Shown: positions 1-19,620 of the stretch, in pieces | Layout: the number at the start of each line of letters is the position of its first letter | How positions within the stretch are numbered: the first letter of the stretch is position 1 | Origin: Vitrella brassicaformis CCMP3155 | Taxonomy: Eukaryota; Protista; Chromerida | DNA: 64,000 nt | Direction of reading: 5' to 3' | NCBI GenBank assembly: GCA_001179505.1 | Contig: CDMY01000193.1 | Span: 62,001-126,000 of the forward strand | Made by a program: the position numbers and the translations under genes | Notes under the pieces: generated by a model | Seen by the model: only the letters and a program-made list of their open reading frames with translations | The model's database searches: none | What the model was told of the DNA's origin: nothing

Positions 1-80
1 CGCCGGCAGGCCACCCTGGAGACAGACGGCTTCATTCTCTCGTTCGCTCACTCACTGCATATATTGTCGTCGTGGTGTCA

Positions 81-2263: not shown

Positions 2264-3191
2264 TCACTCGAGTAGGTAGCCGGAAAGGAAGAGCAGGAAG
2301 AAGAGGCCGAGGCTGCCAAAGATGAGAACGTTCTTCTGGCCGGCCGTCAACGTGTTCGTGCCAATGCCGTACCCCTGGTTGTCAGCAAAACCTGAAAGAA
2401 TGAACCACACGCACCAAAAGCATGACACCGCGTTGACGAAGGCATTGCTGCCGCAGGCGCTCGTGTGGCATTTGCGTTGGGTCGCATATATACCTGCGAT
2501 CGTCCTGGTGATGGGGTTGAAGTAGTTCTTGGGCGCCTTGCAGTTGGGGCACTTCCACCACGTGGGGACGTCCTGCATCCACACACATCACATACAGCCA
2601 CACTTGACCATGCCACCTCCCTCCCTCCCGTCTGGCGCAGCTAGTTGTATAGACCCACCACCCCACCCACCTCACCTCCCACTTAGTGTTGGCCTTGAGG
2701 TAGATGCCATCTCCCTGTTTCCACCGGTAGACGTATCCGCAGTTGCGGCACTGGTAGTCCCCCGTGCTCTCCGTGATGAACTTCTCCTTCTCCTTGAGCT
2801 CCAAGACCTCTATCTGCTTCGGCGTCAAACCCTTGTAGCGCGGGTCAATCTCAGGCTCTTTCGCCGCAGCGCCCTCAGCCTCACCCGAGCCCTCGGTTGC
2901 TGCTGGAGCTGGAGCTGCTGCCGCCGCATCCGTGGCCTCCTTGGTGGCCGTTTGTTGCTCTGTTGATGCCTTTGGTTTCTCAGCCACAGTGCCGGACGCC
3001 CCAGCGGGCTCTGAGAACAGCAGATGGTGCGGCCGTCTTGTGCGGATCTGCTGGCTGCCTGGCCTCACGAGCGAGAGGCATGGCGGGGAGGAGCAGAAGG
3101 CTTCAGCAGCCGTGGCCAGCCCTGGCCATGCGTCTTGTGCGAGGCAGGAGAAGATAAAGGCGACGAACAGAGAGATGAGCTTCATTGCCAA
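2264..3191 (-). CDS. rubA: Plastid thylakoid rubredoxin (RubA/RBD1 type), 3 exons
   Basis: Signal peptide ending AEA-F plus transit-like region. Two CxxC motifs, YQCRNCGYVY and WKCPNCKAPK, then GFADNQGYG and a C-terminal TM helix (NVLIFGSLGLFFLLFLSGYLLE*). Confidence 0.92.
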
Positions 3192-13424: not shown

Positions 13425-14237
13425 TTAAATGATCTTCTGCGTCTGGAAGAATCTGGTGAGGTGGTAGATTTGCAGGACGGTGCAGGTGACGGTGAGGATG
13501 ACCTGCGCGGCCGAGAACCACATGACGCGCGAGCCGATCACCTCCGACGCGTAGGCGAACTCCTCCTCTTGCAGCTTCTCGTAGTCGTTCTCGGCCGAGA
13601 CGGCCTCCGCACGGTCCACCAGCTTCTTGACCGACATCTGGATCGTGTTCAGATGATCCTTCTTGGCTACCTCCTAAACCGCAACCACACAATCAAATCA
13701 ACTGTGTGGTGCAGTGATGGCCATGTCATGCGCACCTCTGGGTTGATGTCTGAGTCGCCGAGCTCTATGGAGAATGTCCACTTGAGCAGTGATGTCGAGA
13801 ACCACTTGGAGGACTGGCACTTGATGCACACCTTGTACTCGCCGTTCTGCGTCGTCAGGTGCGCCACCTTGCCCTTGGGCTCAGCAGCCAGCACCTCCTT
13901 CGAGAACACTTGGCGGCCCCTCGGATCTTTGAACACGATGCTGCACGACACACCTGCACACATACACGCAGAGGATCACACAGCAGGCGAGGTGAGTGAG
14001 AGTGAGTTTGTCTTTGCTGGCTGCTGCAGGTCATTGACCTGGGTTGTCCGGGTTTGAGTAGGTGGTGGTGATGACCTGATTGGCCGGCACGTTCTCGAGA
14101 AAGCACTTCTCGGCACCCTCAGAGACGTAGAAGTAAGCCGCACGTGAGAGGCACAGGCAGTAGAAGAGGACGCATGACCACAGATAGACAACACATGAAG
14201 GTCTTGGTGAGCCCCTGCATAGCCTCCGGCGTTCCAT
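13425..14237 (-). CDS. emp24/gp25L/p24 family GOLD-domain cargo receptor, 3 exons
   Basis: Signal peptide, YFYVSEGAEKCFLENVP, GEYKVCIKC, coiled coil, SRVMWFSAAQVIL TM helix, tail LTRFFQTQKII*. Confidence 0.93.
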
Positions 14238-14460
14238 GATCTGTGAGAACGGCAAGGCAGGCGCTGGACGATAGATGGCGGGCTTCTTCGCTTCTTTCGT
14301 TGCGGCGTTTCTTTCGCACAAGAGATGAGAACACCAGCGCTGCACGACGCGTACTCTTGGGGAGATTGCCTGTTTCTTCCCACCTCTTAAGCTCGCATGC
14401 GCTGCTGATCGCTCACTCCGAGGTGGGCAAACGATGCTGCCGCCCTCGCAGATGTGACTG

Positions 14461-17400
14461 ATGAAAGAGATGAATTCATCTACCTCGTCGATGATCCTGC
14501 TGATCTGTGGCCTCTGTTACACGTCCATCCAGGCCTTCATCGTCAGCCCGCCGCCGCTCAGCAGCGATGAAGGAGGAAGGCAGACAAGGCTCACGAGGCT
14601 CAGCAGAGGCAGAGGCAACAGTGGGTTGAGTCATATGCGCTCCCTGAGCCCAGCAGCAGCCCGTCTGATCAGGCAGAAGAAGAGGGGGCAGAGCAACAAG
14701 GAAGATCCGTCAGCGGCCACGGCCGATGAGAGCGCCGGCAGTGGAGGGCCGTCCCCATCTCTCAGTGAAGACAACGAGAGCAATGCTGTGGATGAGCTCA
14801 CCTTCAATGAGGGCGACGTCTGGACAGCGGACTTGCCGAGCAAACCCTCGCCTTTCAGGCGGGTGGCGGAGAGGCGGATGGCGCAGCTGCAGAGGGAAAA
14901 GAGGCAGGGGAAGGCTGACGCGGCGAGCGCCGCTTCGGGAGAGGAGGACAGAGTCGACGCCCTGGAGTACTGCAGGCGGCAGATGGTGGAGAATGATATC
15001 GACCTGTACTTCATGACGAGCAGCGACGAGCAGATGAACCGCCGGCCAACGCGATTCAATCAGCGATTGAAAAGGCTAACCGGATACACGTAAGCGGGCA
15101 GAGAGAACACGCAGTCAGGCCTGTGTGTGCATCCCGACGTGCCGCGCATGTCTGTGTGCACGTGTGTGTGTGTCAGCGGCATGGCGCTGGCGATCGTGGG
15201 CCGCGAGGAGGGGAGGGCGCATCTGTGGAATATGGACAGGAGGAGGGCAGAGATGTACATCCACACCGACAAGTGGGGCGTCACAAATCTGCAGATAGAC
15301 CTGCCGAACACCGGCTCGTTCGACAAGGATGTGTTTGACAAGCCGCCGTCGGTGGAGGAGTGGCTCGGCAAGTACGGCAAGGACGGCATGCGAGTTGGGA
15401 TCAACCCTCTGACCACAACCATCGGCGAGATGCAGAGGTACGCATCTGTCTTGTGTACGTCACGAACATCCACACAGCAGCAGTGAGTGCAATGGGTCTT
15501 TTCTTTCTTCTCGTAGCTTGGCTGAGACTCTTAATGGCTTCGAAAACTGTCAAATCTTGTTTGTCGAGGACGATCTTTTGCCACCCTCCCTCGCTGAGGA
15601 GACCCCTGTCGACCCGATCCACTGCATCCCTCCCGGGTACATCCGCGCCACGCCGGCCGACCACATTGCGCGGATCCACCAGATAATGAACGGGTCGGCC
15701 TCCCTGATGCTGCTGACCGACCCTGAGGAGATTTCCTTCTATTTGAATGTGAGGGCAACCGACTTCGAGCAGCTGCCGGGCGTCCGCCACGGGTTCTATG
15801 GCTACATGGTCATCAGCCACCCCACCACCGGCACCAGCGACCACCCACCAGCGAGGCTCTACGTGGCGCCCGAGCGGCTGGATGAAGAGGCAAAGGCCTA
15901 CCTGTCAGCTTACGGCGTCGAGGCCCGCCCTTACGATCCTCTTGTCGGCGACCTTCGTCCTCTACTGCAGCAGCAGGTTGAGACGAGGCTATGGATCCCA
16001 CCAGACAGCAACATGGCCATTTATCGCTCACTTCTAGGCCTCGCGGACACGCCTGAGGCCTCCGTGAGCGACGTGGCCGAGACCATCAACAATCCTCCAT
16101 CGCCCAGGATCACCATCCGCCCCTCTCCCGGCCTGCATCTTCCCGACGTGGCATCCAAGGCCTACGGACGGGCAGATCTCTCATCGCCCTTCTACCAAAC
16201 GTACACACCGAAGAGAGTGGATGGGCAGGGGCCGCTGGCTGGCGAGTTGTCACCCCTGTCGCCGTCCGTCATCGCGGGTGTGACAACGCTTAGCAAGGAG
16301 GAGAGGGAGAAGAAGCTGCAGGAGCTGATCGAGACCAAGAGGGAGGTGCGCGGCGAGACCAAAACCACAACCACAACCACCACCGCACAGAAAAGTGAGC
16401 GGGGGAGGCAGACAGGGAGAGGGAGGGAGAATGCATACACACACACCCATTGATTCAACAAGCCCTTCTCAATCGTCTCCCCGCGTATCATTCAGGGGCG
16501 CTTGCCCAAGCATCTAGCCAGTCGCGTCTGCATCCCGACGAGTCTGCCACCTCCCTCCCCAGCTGGTCGCGCCTGCTGGGCGGGGCGCTGCCCAGCCGGG
16601 ACGACCAGGAGGACGAGCTCGAGAATGAGATCTCGAAGTACATCCTCGACTACAGGCGGCCGACTGAGGAGCTGAGCGAGATCGGGGATGACGACCGTGA
16701 GGATGGCGGGCCTGACGGGGCGCTGCCGAGGGTCAAGTGGCGGGACGTTGTGGGGCTTGATGATGTGAAACGAAGGTGCGTGTCCTGGTTGGGGAGGGGC
16801 GTCGCAGCTGTGCATTCATTCGCAGCCGTGCGGTGCGGTGCATGCTGGCTGCAGCTTGCTGGAGCTGATTGTACTGCCTGCCCTGAACCCGTCCTTGTTC
16901 ACCGGCCTGCGGACACCAAGCCGTGGTCTCCTTCTTTTCGGACCGCCAGGTAAGTGGTGGATCGGGGAGGGAGGGAGGGAGGGAGGGAACCAAGGGAGAC
17001 AGACGGCACACACAGAAAGATGCCCCACACACTGTGTTTGTCGACCCCTGCCCGTGGCTGCCCAGGAAACGGCAAGACGTTCGCCGCAAAGGCAGTGGCA
17101 GCACAGGTAGAGCGGAGATGAAGCGACACCTGCAGAAGAAGGACGCATCATCGTGATGTGTGTGGCATGACAGTGTAACTCCACGTTCTTTCTTGTCGAC
17201 GCCGCCTCACTGACGTCGAAATGGTACGCCACTGAGACCTAACTGACCGCTCAGTCCTCTCCCTCCCTCCCTCCCTCTCTCCCTCCCTCCCTCCCTCCTT
17301 CCCTTCCCTTATGTGTCACGTCTGTTGTGTGCATGTGTGCAGGTATGGCGAGTCCGAGAAGCTGGTTCGCGCGTTGTTTCGTGTGGCGCGTGCGCGTTCC

Positions 17401-18098
17401 CCCTCGATCATCTTCCTGGATGAGCTCGACAGCCTCCTGTCGGCACGCGACACGGGAGACCGGGGCGTCAGCAGAAGAATGAAGTCAGAGTTCCTTGTGC
17501 AGCTCGATGGCGTCACCGCCGGCAACGACCCAAGCGACGCGAGGGTGCAGTTTATCGGTGCCACAAACAGGCCTATGGATCTTGATGAGGCGTTGCTGCG
17601 TCGGCTGCCCAAGCGGCTGATGGTTCCCTTGCCTGACGACAGGGGGCGGGAGGCGCTGGTCAGGAAGCTCTTGCGCGAGCACCCCGAAGGCCATGCACTC
17701 GCAGATAGCGACTTCAACTTCGTAAGTTAGCAAACACCAGCCACACGTGATCACGGCGGCAGGCCGACACACCCATGAATGTGTGTGTGTGTGTGTGTGA
17801 TGCATGGCTTCAGCTGGCACTTGAGACCGATGGCTATTCGTATTCTGACATCACCCAGCTGTGCCGGGAGGCCTCATTGGCGCCCGTCCGTGACGCCCTC
17901 ATGACGTCGGTTGATCTCGATGCTGGCTTGGACGGGGCTCATCAGGAGGCGATATCGTCACTGAGTGGGGCCGATCTAAGGCCGCTGCGGATGGGGGACC
18001 TGCTGGCGGCAAAGGAGAGGATCAGAGCCACCACATCCGAGGACACTGTGCGGGAGCTGCGGGAGTGGGACGCCAAATTTGGAGCCAGCCGGATGTAG
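14461..18098 (+). CDS. Fusion: bipartite leader + aminopeptidase P N-terminal (creatinase-N-like) domains + spastin/fidgetin-type AAA+ ATPase; 9 exons, about 965 aa
   Basis: Exons 14461-15089, 15177-15437, 15517-16394, 16496-16775, 16855-16949, 17066-17106, 17174-17223, 17343-17721 and 17814-18098 are all GT-AG and phase-compatible (2898 nt). APP-N motifs: [46 protein letters not shown] motifs: [53 protein letters not shown]. Confidence 0.85.
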
Positions 18099-18740
18099 TG
18101 TGGAGAATGGGCACTTGGATGTGTGTTGATCGATCGCTGTGTTGAGACAGTAGCGTGTGTGTGAGTATGCTGCACATAGCTATGCTTTGTGTGTGGTTCG
18201 AAGACAGACAGACAGACAGACGGACAGAGGATGGGATGTCCAATATTGTGCGAGCAAGTCAGCGATGGATGAAGGAAGGGGTGGCTTACTCAGCGTAATG
18301 TATGTGAGTGGATGGGTGAACTGCGTGCGTGGCGACTCAACGAATATTTGTCACCCAGACAAGGGTGAGGACATGACCACACTTGTACAGAACCACCCAG
18401 AGACATGTACACACGTTCAGTCAAATGATCAGTCAACCCACTGCTGGCCCTGATTGTTCACCACCTGACGCGCACAGAAGACAACGACATCCATCCATCC
18501 ATCCATCCAACCATCAATTCTCACAGTAACGTGACCACATAACGTCGGGCAGATGAGAAAGAAGGAGAGAGAACCAGGAAGAGAGAGGATCACACACAGA
18601 AACACGGCACCGTGCGGCTCGCAGAAAGCAGCGCAGACAGACACAAAATCAGTGCAGAGAAAAGAGCTGCACCGTAGAAAGCTGTGAGTGTCCACACAGC
18701 ATGGGGCGCCCCGCCTATTTTATGTATCACAGCGCCCTCA

Positions 18741-19620
18741 TCAGTAGGGTGCAGCCTTTGCAGCCCCCCTCCTCTTGCCCTCGCCCGACAGCCGAACCAC
18801 CTCCTCGATGCGCCGCTCTCGTGTAGCCGCCCTCTTGGCCGACAGCACCCACTCAAGCGTACCCTATACACATACGCATCGCATGCACCGCACCACAGGC
18901 ACACACGCCAGACAGAGGGTCATGCAGACAAAGTGAAACGGATGCAGTGCACCTCAGTACCATCCATACCCGTTTGTATGACTTTGGGAACTTGTCCCAT
19001 GCTTCCTGTGCTTTGGGGTTCTCCTGCATTGCCGCCGCGAGGTCGTCGGGTAGCGTCAGGGAGTCGGCGCCATTCAGTGCATCCCACTGACCATTATCCT
19101 TGGCGCAATCGATGGCTCCCTGGCCAGCCGGGGTCATCTTGCCCTGTGCAATGAGCTTCTGGACCCGCCGCTTGTTGATGGCCGACCAGTTGGACCTGGG
19201 CCGCCTAGGAGAGATCACACAGAGGTAGCTCTCGCTGTCCCACTTGGCCACTCGCGAGTCAATCCAGCCGTAGCACAAAAGCTCATCCACCGCCTCATCG
19301 TATGTCACGGATGGGGTGCTGCTGGCCTTCTTGAACAGCCGCAGCCACACGCTGCTCTTCTGCTGGTGGTGTTCCTTAAGCCACCCTCGAAGGGCCTCTG
19401 CGCTGCTTGCAGTGACGATTTGCAGCCCCTCGTGCTGTGTGGCCATCAGCAGCAGGTCCGCGCGTCGCCTTGCAGGGGGAGGAATCCGACGAGTGGGGAC
19501 AGCAGTCAAGGCCGTGCTCCAGGCAAGGAAGCCGACGATGAATAGAGGTGGCGGTAGAGATGAGGCGCCTCCTCTTGCTGCAGGAGTGGACGTCAAGGCA
19601 GGCGGATCTTCCTGGGGCAT
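18741..19620 (-). CDS. YdeI/OmpD-associated (bacteriocin-protection) family protein with N-terminal extension, 2 exons
   Basis: LRGWLKEHH...VWLRLFKK...VTYDEAVDELLCYGWIDS, SPRRPRSNWSAINKRRVQKLIAQGKMTPAG, LPDDLAAAM...W. Intron 18969-18864, then TLEWVLSAKRAATRERRIEEVV; stop 18741-18743. Confidence 0.88.

What the first reader, a model, noticed from the sequence alone, without database searches (positions are those of the whole stretch)
14461..18098. Aminopeptidase-P N-domains fused to a spastin-type AAA+ ATPase behind a plastid-type leader
Seen: nine phase-compatible exons give one ORF of about 965 aa. The key junction is donor GTGAGC at 16395 to pyrimidine-rich CAG at 16495 (101 nt, phase 1/1), and the AAA half has no ATG or promoter space of its own. 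The N-half matches both non-catalytic creatinase-N-like domains of aminopeptidase P, but the M24 metal-binding domain is absent. The C-half has intact Walker A (GPPGNGKT), pore loop (KWYG), Walker B (IIFLDE) and Arg fingers, with spastin-like [20 protein letters not shown] but no MIT domain. The leader ends IQA-F, like the rubredoxin leader (AEA-F) in this window. Established: spastin, katanin, Vps4 and Msp1 are hexameric cytosol-facing threading machines whose N-domain selects the substrate; A-F cleavage marks complex-plastid import in red-lineage algae. Inference: an organellar unfoldase or extractase using a peptidase-derived adaptor, perhaps to grip N-termini or dock a true aminopeptidase. 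I know no described protein with this architecture.
Basis: partly seen in the sequence, partly recalled or inferred. Interest (0 to 1): 0.88.

Follow-up and report, generated by a model that had tools for sequence, protein, structure and literature searches.

The report
Spastin-like ATPase fused to dead aminopeptidase
A chromerid alga (Vitrella brassicaformis) really makes one spliced mRNA joining a secretory or plastid-type leader, the two non-catalytic front domains of aminopeptidase P and a complete spastin/fidgetin-type protein-pulling ATPase, a combination found in no other organism searched, but what it does is still inferred.

Summary
Nine GT..AG exons (14461-18098, + strand) give a 965-aa ORF.

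**Transcript evidence**
- A 3223-nt public transcript scaffold covers window 14424-18375 with all eight introns removed.
- Contigs of two RNA runs carry the key 16394/16496 joint, with no depth inside that intron.

**Identity**
- The genome is Vitrella brassicaformis CCMP3155.
- The fused ORF is already deposited as an uncharacterised model (CEL93829.1, 955 aa). I found no paper naming it.

**Domains**
- Creatinase_N_2 is significant. Creatinase_N is borderline by sequence but supported by fold (TM 0.74 over both domains).
- No M24 catalytic domain occurs in any frame of the window.
- The AAA module is intact and closest to spastin and FIGL1. In a tree it sits with alveolate MIT-AAA proteins, on a long branch.

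**Uniqueness**
- No other protein in 1.8 billion representatives or 5.8 billion clusters shares this N-half or the architecture.

**Reading**
- Most likely a hexameric threading ATPase whose MIT domain was replaced by a peptidase-derived module, sent into the endomembrane/plastid route.
- Localisation is unproven. The hydrophobic leader could equally be an Msp1-like membrane anchor.
- This is a new variant of a known kind, of moderate interest.

The parts
14424..18375 (+). Extent of the mRNA as seen in transcript scaffold L001: 37-nt 5' UTR, 2898-nt spliced CDS, 277-nt 3' UTR
14434..14457 (+). Upstream ORF of 7 codons in the 5' UTR. Its in-frame stop lies 3 nt before the main ATG
   Evidence: read; present in L001
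14461..14535 (+). Signal-peptide-like leader, residues 1-25: polar n-region, h-region [10 protein letters not shown], c-region TSIQA. In-frame ATGs at residues 1, 4 and 11. The deposited model starts at residue 11
14536..14715 (+). Phe at +1 followed by a basic, Ser/Thr-rich transit-peptide-like stretch: 12 K/R against 4 D/E in 60 aa
   Evidence: motif context from PMC6668581 and PMC8233740
14941..16042 (+). Aminopeptidase-P-type domains I and II (Creatinase_N about 14968-15538, Creatinase_N_2 about 15602-16033), interrupted by introns 1 and 2. No catalytic M24 domain follows
16034..16731 (+). Linker of about 200 aa, mostly low confidence or disordered, with a Thr7 run, one long helix and the pre-AAA helix. 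It contains the key intron 16395-16495
16395..16495 (+). 101-nt GT..AG intron joining the peptidase-derived half to the AAA half. Spliced out in two RNA runs and in L001; it carries zero depth in the RNA contigs
16928..17631 (+). AAA ATPase core. Walker A 16940-17079 (split by intron 5), pore loop 1 KWYG 17219-17349 (split by intron 7), Walker B 17407-17424, sensor-1 17560-17574, Arg pair 17593-17616
17704..18098 (+). AAA lid domain and C-terminal helix (conserved W..FG, weak Vps4_C match), with a 14-aa insertion relative to spastins; ends at the stop codon

Best explanation
This is a genuine, expressed and so far Vitrella-only gene. It arose when an alveolate spastin/FIGL1-like AAA ATPase lost its MIT domain. 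In its place it gained an ER-type leader and the two non-catalytic N-domains of a three-domain aminopeptidase P.

Shown here:
- one spliced mRNA;
- the domain content;
- intact ATPase and pore-loop motifs;
- absence of M24 and MIT domains;
- absence of the architecture elsewhere.

Inferred:
- The protein forms a hexamer that uses ATP to pull polypeptide through its central pore, as its nearest relatives do.
- The peptidase-derived domains, tethered by a flexible linker of about 200 aa, act as the partner- or substrate-selecting module that MIT provides in relatives.
- The leader sends the protein co-translationally into the ER. From there, because of Phe at +1 and the basic Ser/Thr-rich stretch, it goes on towards the four-membrane plastid. 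No microtubules exist there, so the client must be something else.
For: - Gene model and splicing.
- Public annotation of the same ORF.
- Domains. The PDB sequence search gives XPNPEP1 (3CTZ) at E 9.4e-5 across the end of domain I and all of domain II. The fold match is TM 0.74 over both N-domains.
- AAA identity: spastin is the best single-AAA PDB sequence hit at 262 bits. Foldseek ranks FIGL-1, spastin and FIGNL1 above Vps4 and katanin, with TM by target 0.84-0.94. pLDDT is 81-97 over most of the AAA module.
- Every catalytic and pore motif is conserved.
- Tree: the AAA groups (95/86) with MIT-bearing alveolate proteins and lies near Vitrella's own 473-aa paralogue.
- Leader features, and an in-window plastid control (rubredoxin, AEA|F).
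- Phe at +1 is documented for chromerid plastid proteins (PMC6668581, PMC8233740, PMC4010437).
- Non-catalytic aminopeptidase-P-like domains serve as protein-binding modules in Spt16 and Shulin (bioRxiv 10.1101/2020.09.04.282897).
Against: - There is no localisation or activity data.
- SignalP and ASAFind could not be run.
- The hydrophobic stretch of 19 residues (KD 1.98) fits a membrane anchor as well as a cleaved signal peptide.
- Phe at +1 is less conserved in Vitrella than in Chromera.
- The uORF and the weak context of the first ATG leave the start codon uncertain.
- The N-half has no detectable orthologue, and Pfam hits are weak, so it may be under relaxed constraint.
- The AAA sits on a long branch of 0.97 against a median of 0.38.
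- The N-half of the AF2 model is low confidence because no alignment was available.
Confidence: 0.5

Rival explanations
1. Membrane-tethered, cytosol-facing enzyme. On this reading the N-terminal hydrophobic segment is not cleaved. It acts as an N-out/C-in signal anchor, as in Msp1/ATAD1 or the hairpin of spastin M1. The peptidase-derived domains and the AAA ring would then sit on the cytosolic face of the ER or of the outermost plastid membrane, acting as an extractase or a membrane-associated severing enzyme.
For: - KD(19) = 1.98 for residues 10-28, above the usual 1.6 threshold for a membrane span. The rubredoxin control leader scores only 1.59.
- The basic cluster lies on the C-terminal side of the segment, which favours a cytosolic C-terminus.
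- All known meiotic-clade AAA proteins work on the cytosolic or nuclear side (established knowledge).
- Related hits P0111 and P0004 also begin with hydrophobic segments.
Against: - The segment has the classic n/h/c layout, with Ile at -3 and Ala at -1, followed by Phe, as in plastid leaders of this genome.
- Its uninterrupted hydrophobic core is only about 10 residues, with T, S and Q inside the 19-residue window.
Confidence: 0.22
2. Evolutionary accident with a passenger N-half. A deletion or exon shuffle joined a decaying aminopeptidase P gene to a spastin-like paralogue. The AAA part still does a conventional job, and the peptidase remnant is a nearly neutral spacer.
For: - The N-half has no orthologue anywhere, and only one distant hit at E 2.9e-5 in an exhaustive search.
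- Creatinase_N falls just under the Pfam cutoff.
- A long disordered low-complexity linker follows.
- The architecture is seen in a single species.
Against: - Both N-domains still give a recognisable fold (TM 0.74).
- The 660-codon N-terminal part stays open across three exons and is spliced precisely.
- A conventional cytosolic job is hard to square with the leader.
Confidence: 0.15
3. Leaderless or dual-localised protein. After the uORF, ribosomes start at Met59 or Met140, giving a cytosolic form without the signal sequence. This form may occur alone or alongside the long form, as with spastin M1 and M87.
For: - The uORF at 14434-14457 ends 3 nt before the first ATG, which has a pyrimidine at -3.
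- The JGI gene call starts at Met140, but only because of the N gap in the scaffold.
Against: - The deposited model and the ORF structure favour the first ATG cluster.
- Met4 has a purine at -3.
- The 139 upstream codons are open and in frame, and they have an organised leader-like composition.
Confidence: 0.08
4. Artefact: two neighbouring genes wrongly merged by prediction or by assembly.
For: None found. The lay of the DNA contigs leaves holes over exon 3, so the contiguity of the genome there rests on the 31-mer share of 1.00 for run X3.
Against: - An in-frame GT..AG splice is seen in two RNA runs and in an independent transcript scaffold.
- No intron-retaining contig was found.
- There is no start codon for the AAA half.
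Confidence: 0.02

Closest known systems
Spastin (SPAST) and fidgetin-like 1 (FIGL1/FIGNL1), meiotic-clade AAA ATPases
   Same: - A single AAA cassette, 47-49% identical.
- GPPGNGKT P-loop as in spastins.
- Pore loops, Walker B, sensor-1, Arg pair and C-terminal helix all conserved.
- These are the best sequence and fold matches in the PDB.
   Different: - No MIT domain, no microtubule-binding region and no FIGNL1 N-terminal region.
- A leader and aminopeptidase-derived domains take their place.
- Pore loop 1 reads KWYG rather than spastin's KYVG.
- There is a 14-aa insertion in the lid.
- The protein does not branch with metazoan spastins.
Alveolate MIT-AAA proteins (Vitrella CEL94577.1, 473 aa; Perkinsus olseni 'KATNAL2'; JGI P0007)
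   Same: These are the nearest relatives of the AAA module in the tree (95/86 support for the group with P0007 and the Perkinsus protein), at 49-51% identity.
   Different: Their N-termini carry an MIT-like helical region and no leader. They show no similarity to the N-half of the fusion.
Three-domain aminopeptidase P (human XPNPEP1, PDB 3CTZ; Plasmodium falciparum APP, PDB 5JQK)
   Same: Domains I and II (Creatinase_N and Creatinase_N_2) are homologous, in the same order.
   Different: The whole catalytic M24 'pita-bread' domain and its C-terminal region are missing. The protein therefore cannot be a peptidase.
Msp1/ATAD1 and the spastin M1 isoform
   Same: Each is a meiotic-clade AAA with an N-terminal hydrophobic segment that fixes its location. 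This is a functional analogy for an extractase.
   Different: Their segments are uncleaved anchors and the ring faces the cytosol. Here the segment looks more like a cleavable signal peptide followed by Phe. Not resolved.
Spt16 N-terminal domain and Shulin N1/N2
   Same: Peptidase-derived, catalytically dead aminopeptidase-P-like modules reused for protein binding.
   Different: Those retain the pita-bread lobe. This protein keeps only the creatinase-N-like lobes.
Symbiont-specific Cdc48 of the SELMA import machinery in complex red plastids
   Same: A precedent for a cytosolic-type AAA unfoldase relocated behind a bipartite leader into a compartment of a four-membrane plastid (established knowledge; context).
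   Different: - It belongs to a different AAA clade, with a double ring.
- It is conserved across red-lineage algae and has known cofactors.
- Periplastid proteins usually lack the aromatic +1 residue.

Membership tests
Meiotic-clade AAA ATPases (spastin/katanin/fidgetin/VPS4/MSP1) | Single AAA cassette with Walker A, Walker B, sensor-1 and Arg fingers | tested here: met
   Pfam AAA at E 1.8e-36. The motifs align with spastin, FIGL1 and katanin.
Meiotic-clade AAA ATPases (spastin/katanin/fidgetin/VPS4/MSP1) | Aromatic pore loop 1 and a conserved pore loop 2 region | tested here: met
   KWYG and SRRMKSEF align with K[WY]xG and SRRLKTEF of the relatives.
Meiotic-clade AAA ATPases (spastin/katanin/fidgetin/VPS4/MSP1) | C-terminal helix after the lid (Vps4_C-like) | tested here: inconclusive
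   Vps4_C falls below the Pfam cutoff. The W..FG end is conserved in the alignment, and a helix at P0001 808-821 is modelled at high confidence.
Meiotic-clade AAA ATPases (spastin/katanin/fidgetin/VPS4/MSP1) | Closest solved structures belong to the clade | tested here: met
   FIGL-1, spastin, FIGNL1, Vps4 and katanin fill the top 49 Foldseek ranks.
Spastin proper (orthologue) | MIT domain and microtubule-binding region N-terminal to the AAA | tested here: not met
   No MIT hit at E <= 1. The N-half is peptidase-derived.
Spastin proper (orthologue) | Branches with spastins in an AAA tree | tested here: not met
   It groups with alveolate MIT-AAA proteins. The metazoan spastins form a separate, supported clade, and the backbone is unresolved.
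Aminopeptidase P (peptidase family M24B, three-domain type) | Creatinase_N plus Creatinase_N_2 N-terminal domains | tested here: met
   Creatinase_N_2 at E 2e-14. Creatinase_N at 21.7 bits against a cutoff of 22. Fold match TM 0.74 over both domains. 3CTZ at E 9.4e-5.
Aminopeptidase P (peptidase family M24B, three-domain type) | Catalytic M24 pita-bread domain with its metal ligands | tested here: not met
   No Peptidase_M24 hit at E <= 1. tblastn with an M24-bearing relative found only domain II anywhere in the window. The linker is modelled as disordered.
Complex-plastid bipartite targeting sequence (chromerid type) | ER signal peptide with a cleavage site | tested here: inconclusive
   The n/h/c layout and Ile/Ala at -3/-1 are visible. 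Only hydropathy could be computed, and it also fits a signal anchor. SignalP was not available.
Complex-plastid bipartite targeting sequence (chromerid type) | Aromatic residue (Phe) at +1 and a basic, hydroxylated transit peptide | tested here: met
   Phe26, then 12 K/R against 4 D/E and 12 S/T in 60 aa. This holds only if cleavage falls after IQA. The motif is less strict in Vitrella.
Complex-plastid bipartite targeting sequence (chromerid type) | Demonstrated plastid localisation | not testable with these tools
   Needs tagging, immuno-EM or organelle proteomics.

The most novel reading that the evidence does not exclude
A meiotic-clade (spastin/FIGL1-type) threading ATPase works inside a four-membrane plastid, in the stroma or an inter-membrane space. 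No member of this clade is known there. It would use catalytically dead aminopeptidase-P domains to pick its clients or to dock a partner, for example as an import-linked or quality-control unfoldase acting on newly imported preproteins.
Probability: 0.12. Interest if true: 0.8.

Novelty: new variant of a known kind. Interest (0 to 1): 0.5.

Why it matters
Meiotic-clade AAA ATPases pick their clients through interchangeable N-terminal modules: MIT, a membrane anchor or LisH. A peptidase-derived module behind a secretory or plastid leader would be a new solution to that problem. If the leader works as it looks, it would also be the first member of the clade on the lumenal or organellar side of a membrane.

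It is a clean natural example of domain replacement, with its likely parent (an MIT-AAA paralogue) still present in the same genome. It is also a testable candidate for an unknown protein-handling step in the chromerid plastid, the free-living model for the apicoplast.

The weight of the finding is limited. The gene is known from one species only, and nothing is known about its function.

Tried and rejected
The repeat worked.
- Exhaustive phmmer with the 292-aa exon 3 piece found only the protein itself and one 507-aa aminopeptidase P at E 2.9e-5.
- The word-indexed search with the N-half found only the protein itself.
- A search seeded with the N-part of that 507-aa relative, meant to collect sequences for an alignment, returned only the query, so that search was wasted.
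- The scan of JGI metagenome contigs with the N-half found no relative.
- With no alignment for the N-half, AlphaFold gave it only pLDDT 40-78. I relied on the ESM Atlas model comparison instead.
- I looked for an M24 remnant in the linker, in the introns and in other frames. There is none.
- I looked for MIT-like similarity between the fusion's N-half and its AAA relatives. There is none.
- Paper searches for the accessions and for the architecture gave no paper on this protein.
- The first regular expression for the rubredoxin control failed. A looser one found it.
- One Pfam call failed on a reading-frame slip.
- I rejected the two-genes-merged reading and the intron-retention reading on the RNA evidence.
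- SignalP, ASAFind and TargetP are not available here, so the leader was judged only by hydropathy, composition and comparison with one in-window control.
Full report
**1. The observation**

Reading window 13800-18900 and joining nine exons at GT..AG sites gives one open frame of 2898 nt, or 965 aa. The exons are 14461-15089, 15177-15437, 15517-16394, 16496-16775, 16855-16949, 17066-17106, 17174-17223, 17343-17721 and 17814-18098. The introns are 67-119 nt long. An in-frame TGA lies 3 nt upstream of the first ATG, so the frame cannot extend further 5' within this exon. No Met occurs between residues 463 and 791, while Walker A is at 712-719 and Walker B at 767-772.

**2. Transcript evidence**

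- RNA contigs. Two runs that behave as RNA (X1 and X2, which hold 0.53 and 0.43 of the sampled words) carry contigs with the joint 16394->16496 (skips 101, GT..AG). The shorter side of the joint has 90 and 55 letters. They also carry the joints of introns 2, 4, 5, 6, 7 and 8.
- No intron retention. The depth of bin 16405-16571 in both runs equals what the exon part alone would give (6.7 x 76/167 = 3.05 and 5.5 x 55/167 = 1.81). No assembled contig retains the intron.
- DNA runs. The DNA-like run X4 keeps introns 4-6 unspliced (piece 16602-17249), and X3 and X4 both keep intron 8 (piece 17312-18193).
- Independent scaffold. An exhaustive protein search returned an 826-aa protein identical to the model from Met140 onward. 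It is encoded on a 3223-nt JGI contig, L001.
  - L001 maps to window 14424-18375 with all eight introns removed, intron 1 included.
  - It differs from the genome only by a 10-N scaffold gap plus one base in exon 1.
  - That gap, not biology, made the gene caller start at Met140.
- Conclusion. Those were no spanning reads, or a transcript ending after the 16453 stop.

**3. Identity and prior annotation**

The 90% cluster of that protein contains CEL93829.1 / UniProt A0A0G4ECW6, an 'unnamed protein product / AAA+ ATPase domain-containing protein' of 955 aa from Vitrella brassicaformis CCMP3155. It equals my model from Met11. The fused ORF is therefore already a public prediction. Full-text searches for both accessions found no paper.

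**4. The N-half**

- Pfam. It finds Creatinase_N_2 (E 2e-14, above the cutoff) and Creatinase_N (21.7 bits against a cutoff of 22), and nothing of Peptidase_M24 at E <= 1.
- PDB sequences. The best match is human XPNPEP1 (3CTZ), at E 9.4e-5 from the end of domain I through domain II. There is a weak match of the first domain to Plasmodium aminopeptidase P, 5JQK.
- Fold. The ESM Atlas holds a model of this very protein. Residues 151-462 superpose on clusters carrying Creatinase_N + Creatinase_N_2 (+M24), with TM 0.74 by the query over about 280 residues. All 100 feature neighbours are Creatinase_N / Creatinase_N_2 clusters.
- No M24 remnant. tblastn with an M24-bearing relative (P0002) against the whole window matches only domain II (15665-16039) and no catalytic remnant in any frame.
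- Linker. AlphaFold models the roughly 200 residues between domain II and the AAA core as mostly disordered. The exceptions are a helix at P0001 418-435 and the pre-AAA helix at 485-500.
- Conclusion. Both non-catalytic domains are present, the first only marginally by sequence. The peptidase itself is gone.

**5. The AAA half**

- Pfam gives AAA at E 1.8e-36 and AAA_lid_3 at E 2e-9. Vps4_C is below the cutoff.
- Among single-cassette PDB chains, spastin scores best (262 bits, aligned end to end).
- Foldseek on the model, whose AAA part has pLDDT 81-97 over most of its length, ranks C. elegans FIGL-1, spastin and FIGNL1 first, then Vps4 and katanin.
- The alignment with spastins, FIGL1, katanin and two alveolate relatives shows GPPGNGKT (the Asn version shared with spastins), [25 protein letters not shown], the LLRR Arg pair and the C-terminal W..FG. 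All are in place, with a 14-aa insertion in the lid.
- In a maximum-likelihood tree of 28 AAA modules, the fusion groups (95/86) with a JGI protein (P0007) and a Perkinsus protein. It lies next to Vitrella's own 473-aa 'microtubule-severing ATPase' (CEL94577.1). Its branch is 0.97 long against a median of 0.38.
- Metazoan spastins form their own clade, and the backbone of the tree is unresolved.
- Those alveolate relatives carry MIT-like N-termini with no similarity to the fusion's N-half.
- The most economical history is duplication of an alveolate MIT-AAA gene followed by replacement of its N-terminal region.

**6. How unusual the architecture is**

- The exhaustive phmmer of exon 3 against 1.84 billion representatives gave only the protein itself and one aminopeptidase P at E 2.9e-5.
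- The word-indexed search of 5.8 billion clusters with the N-half gave only the protein itself.
- None of the 120 best AAA relatives of 454-1445 aa carries a Creatinase domain.
- No ESM Atlas cluster of 50 or more members combines the two parts.
- The JGI metagenome contigs hold no relative of the N-half.
- Within the reach of these collections, which do contain chromerid and MMETSP proteins, the combination is unique to Vitrella. No Chromera orthologue surfaced.

**7. The leader**

- Layout. Residues 1-25 have a polar n-region, the hydrophobic core [10 protein letters not shown] and a TSIQA c-region with Ile at -3 and Ala at -1. Phe26 follows, then 60 residues with 12 K/R, 4 D/E and 12 S/T, then an acidic stretch.
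- In-window control. The rubredoxin gene of the same window, a plastid protein by family, has ...AAEA|F followed by a similar basic stretch.
- Literature. Chromerid plastid proteins use a signal peptide plus a transit peptide with Phe at +1. The Phe is less strictly kept in Vitrella than in Chromera (PMC6668581; PMC8233740; PMC4010437).
- Against a simple reading:
  - The 19-residue window 10-28 has a mean hydropathy of 1.98, enough for a membrane span, while the rubredoxin leader reaches only 1.59.
  - The 5' UTR holds a 7-codon uORF that ends 3 nt before the first ATG, and that ATG has a weak context.
- Conclusion. Entry into the ER route is likely. Onward plastid import is plausible. A cytosol-facing anchored topology like Msp1 or spastin M1, or partial use of downstream starts, cannot be excluded.

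**8. Mechanism**

- What is shown. There is an intact, expressed AAA module of the clade whose members form hexamers and thread polypeptide through pore loops. It is tethered by a long flexible linker to two folded, catalytically meaningless peptidase domains, behind a targeting-type leader.
- What is inferred. The ring is an ATP-driven unfoldase or extractase. The peptidase-derived domains take over the partner-selecting role that MIT has in relatives. This has a precedent in the reuse of aminopeptidase-P-like modules for protein binding in Spt16 and Shulin. The compartment lacks microtubules, so the client is new.
Docking to a true aminopeptidase P is possible but untested.
- Odds I give:
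  - the fusion is real: 0.97;
  - the ATPase is an active threading enzyme: about 0.8;
  - it follows a lumenal or plastid route: about 0.5-0.6;
  - the N-domains act as a functional adaptor: about 0.5.

**9. Verdict**

This is a new variant of a known kind: a meiotic-clade AAA ATPase with an unprecedented N-terminal module and a probable organellar address. It occurs in one species, is already deposited as an unnamed model, and has no functional data. Interest is moderate (0.5). It would rise sharply if plastid localisation were shown.

Earlier notes of this scan on the same genome report signal-peptide-plus-Phe leaders on other proteins. One is a candidate SELMA-type Npl4. They are context only and were not tested here.

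Noticed in passing
window 14434-14457 (+): A 7-codon upstream ORF (with a second ATG as its last sense codon) lies in the 5' UTR of the fusion mRNA. It ends 3 nt before the main ATG and is present in transcript scaffold L001. It could shift initiation to Met4, Met11 or further downstream.
   Followed up: partly
window 13425-14230 (-): The head-to-head neighbour is an intron-containing p24/emp24 GOLD-family cargo receptor gene (Pfam EMP24_GP25L at E 1.7e-13 and 5e-7 on two exons). Only about 200 nt separate it from the 5' end of the fusion mRNA, so the two probably share a bidirectional promoter.
   Followed up: partly
window 18853-19620 (-): The convergent downstream ORF carries a bacterial-type OmdA/YdeI domain (E 1.8e-9) behind an N-terminal region rich in Pro, Ala and Arg.
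   Followed up: no
window about 2537-3110 (-): A rubredoxin gene whose leader ends ...AAEA|F and is followed by a basic stretch. I used it as the in-window control for a plastid-type leader.
   Followed up: partly
window 18390, 18430, 18672, 18864: Contigs of both the RNA and the DNA runs break away from the window sequence at the same places in and after the 3' UTR (loose ends). This may reflect assembly-graph branching at repeats or a second haplotype.
   Followed up: no
window 16956-16998, 17250-17311, 17767-17809: Introns 5, 7 and 8 hold low-complexity runs: (GGGA)n in intron 5, its complement (CCCT)n in intron 7 and (GT)n in intron 8. The read tool skipped them as repeats. Introns 5 and 7 split the Walker A motif and pore loop 1.
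   Followed up: no
P0004 (JGI protein, 1073 aa): Another odd relative joins a kinesin motor domain (PF00225) to a spastin-like AAA module, with two N-terminal hydrophobic segments. In the tree it falls near the Vitrella AAA proteins.
   Followed up: no
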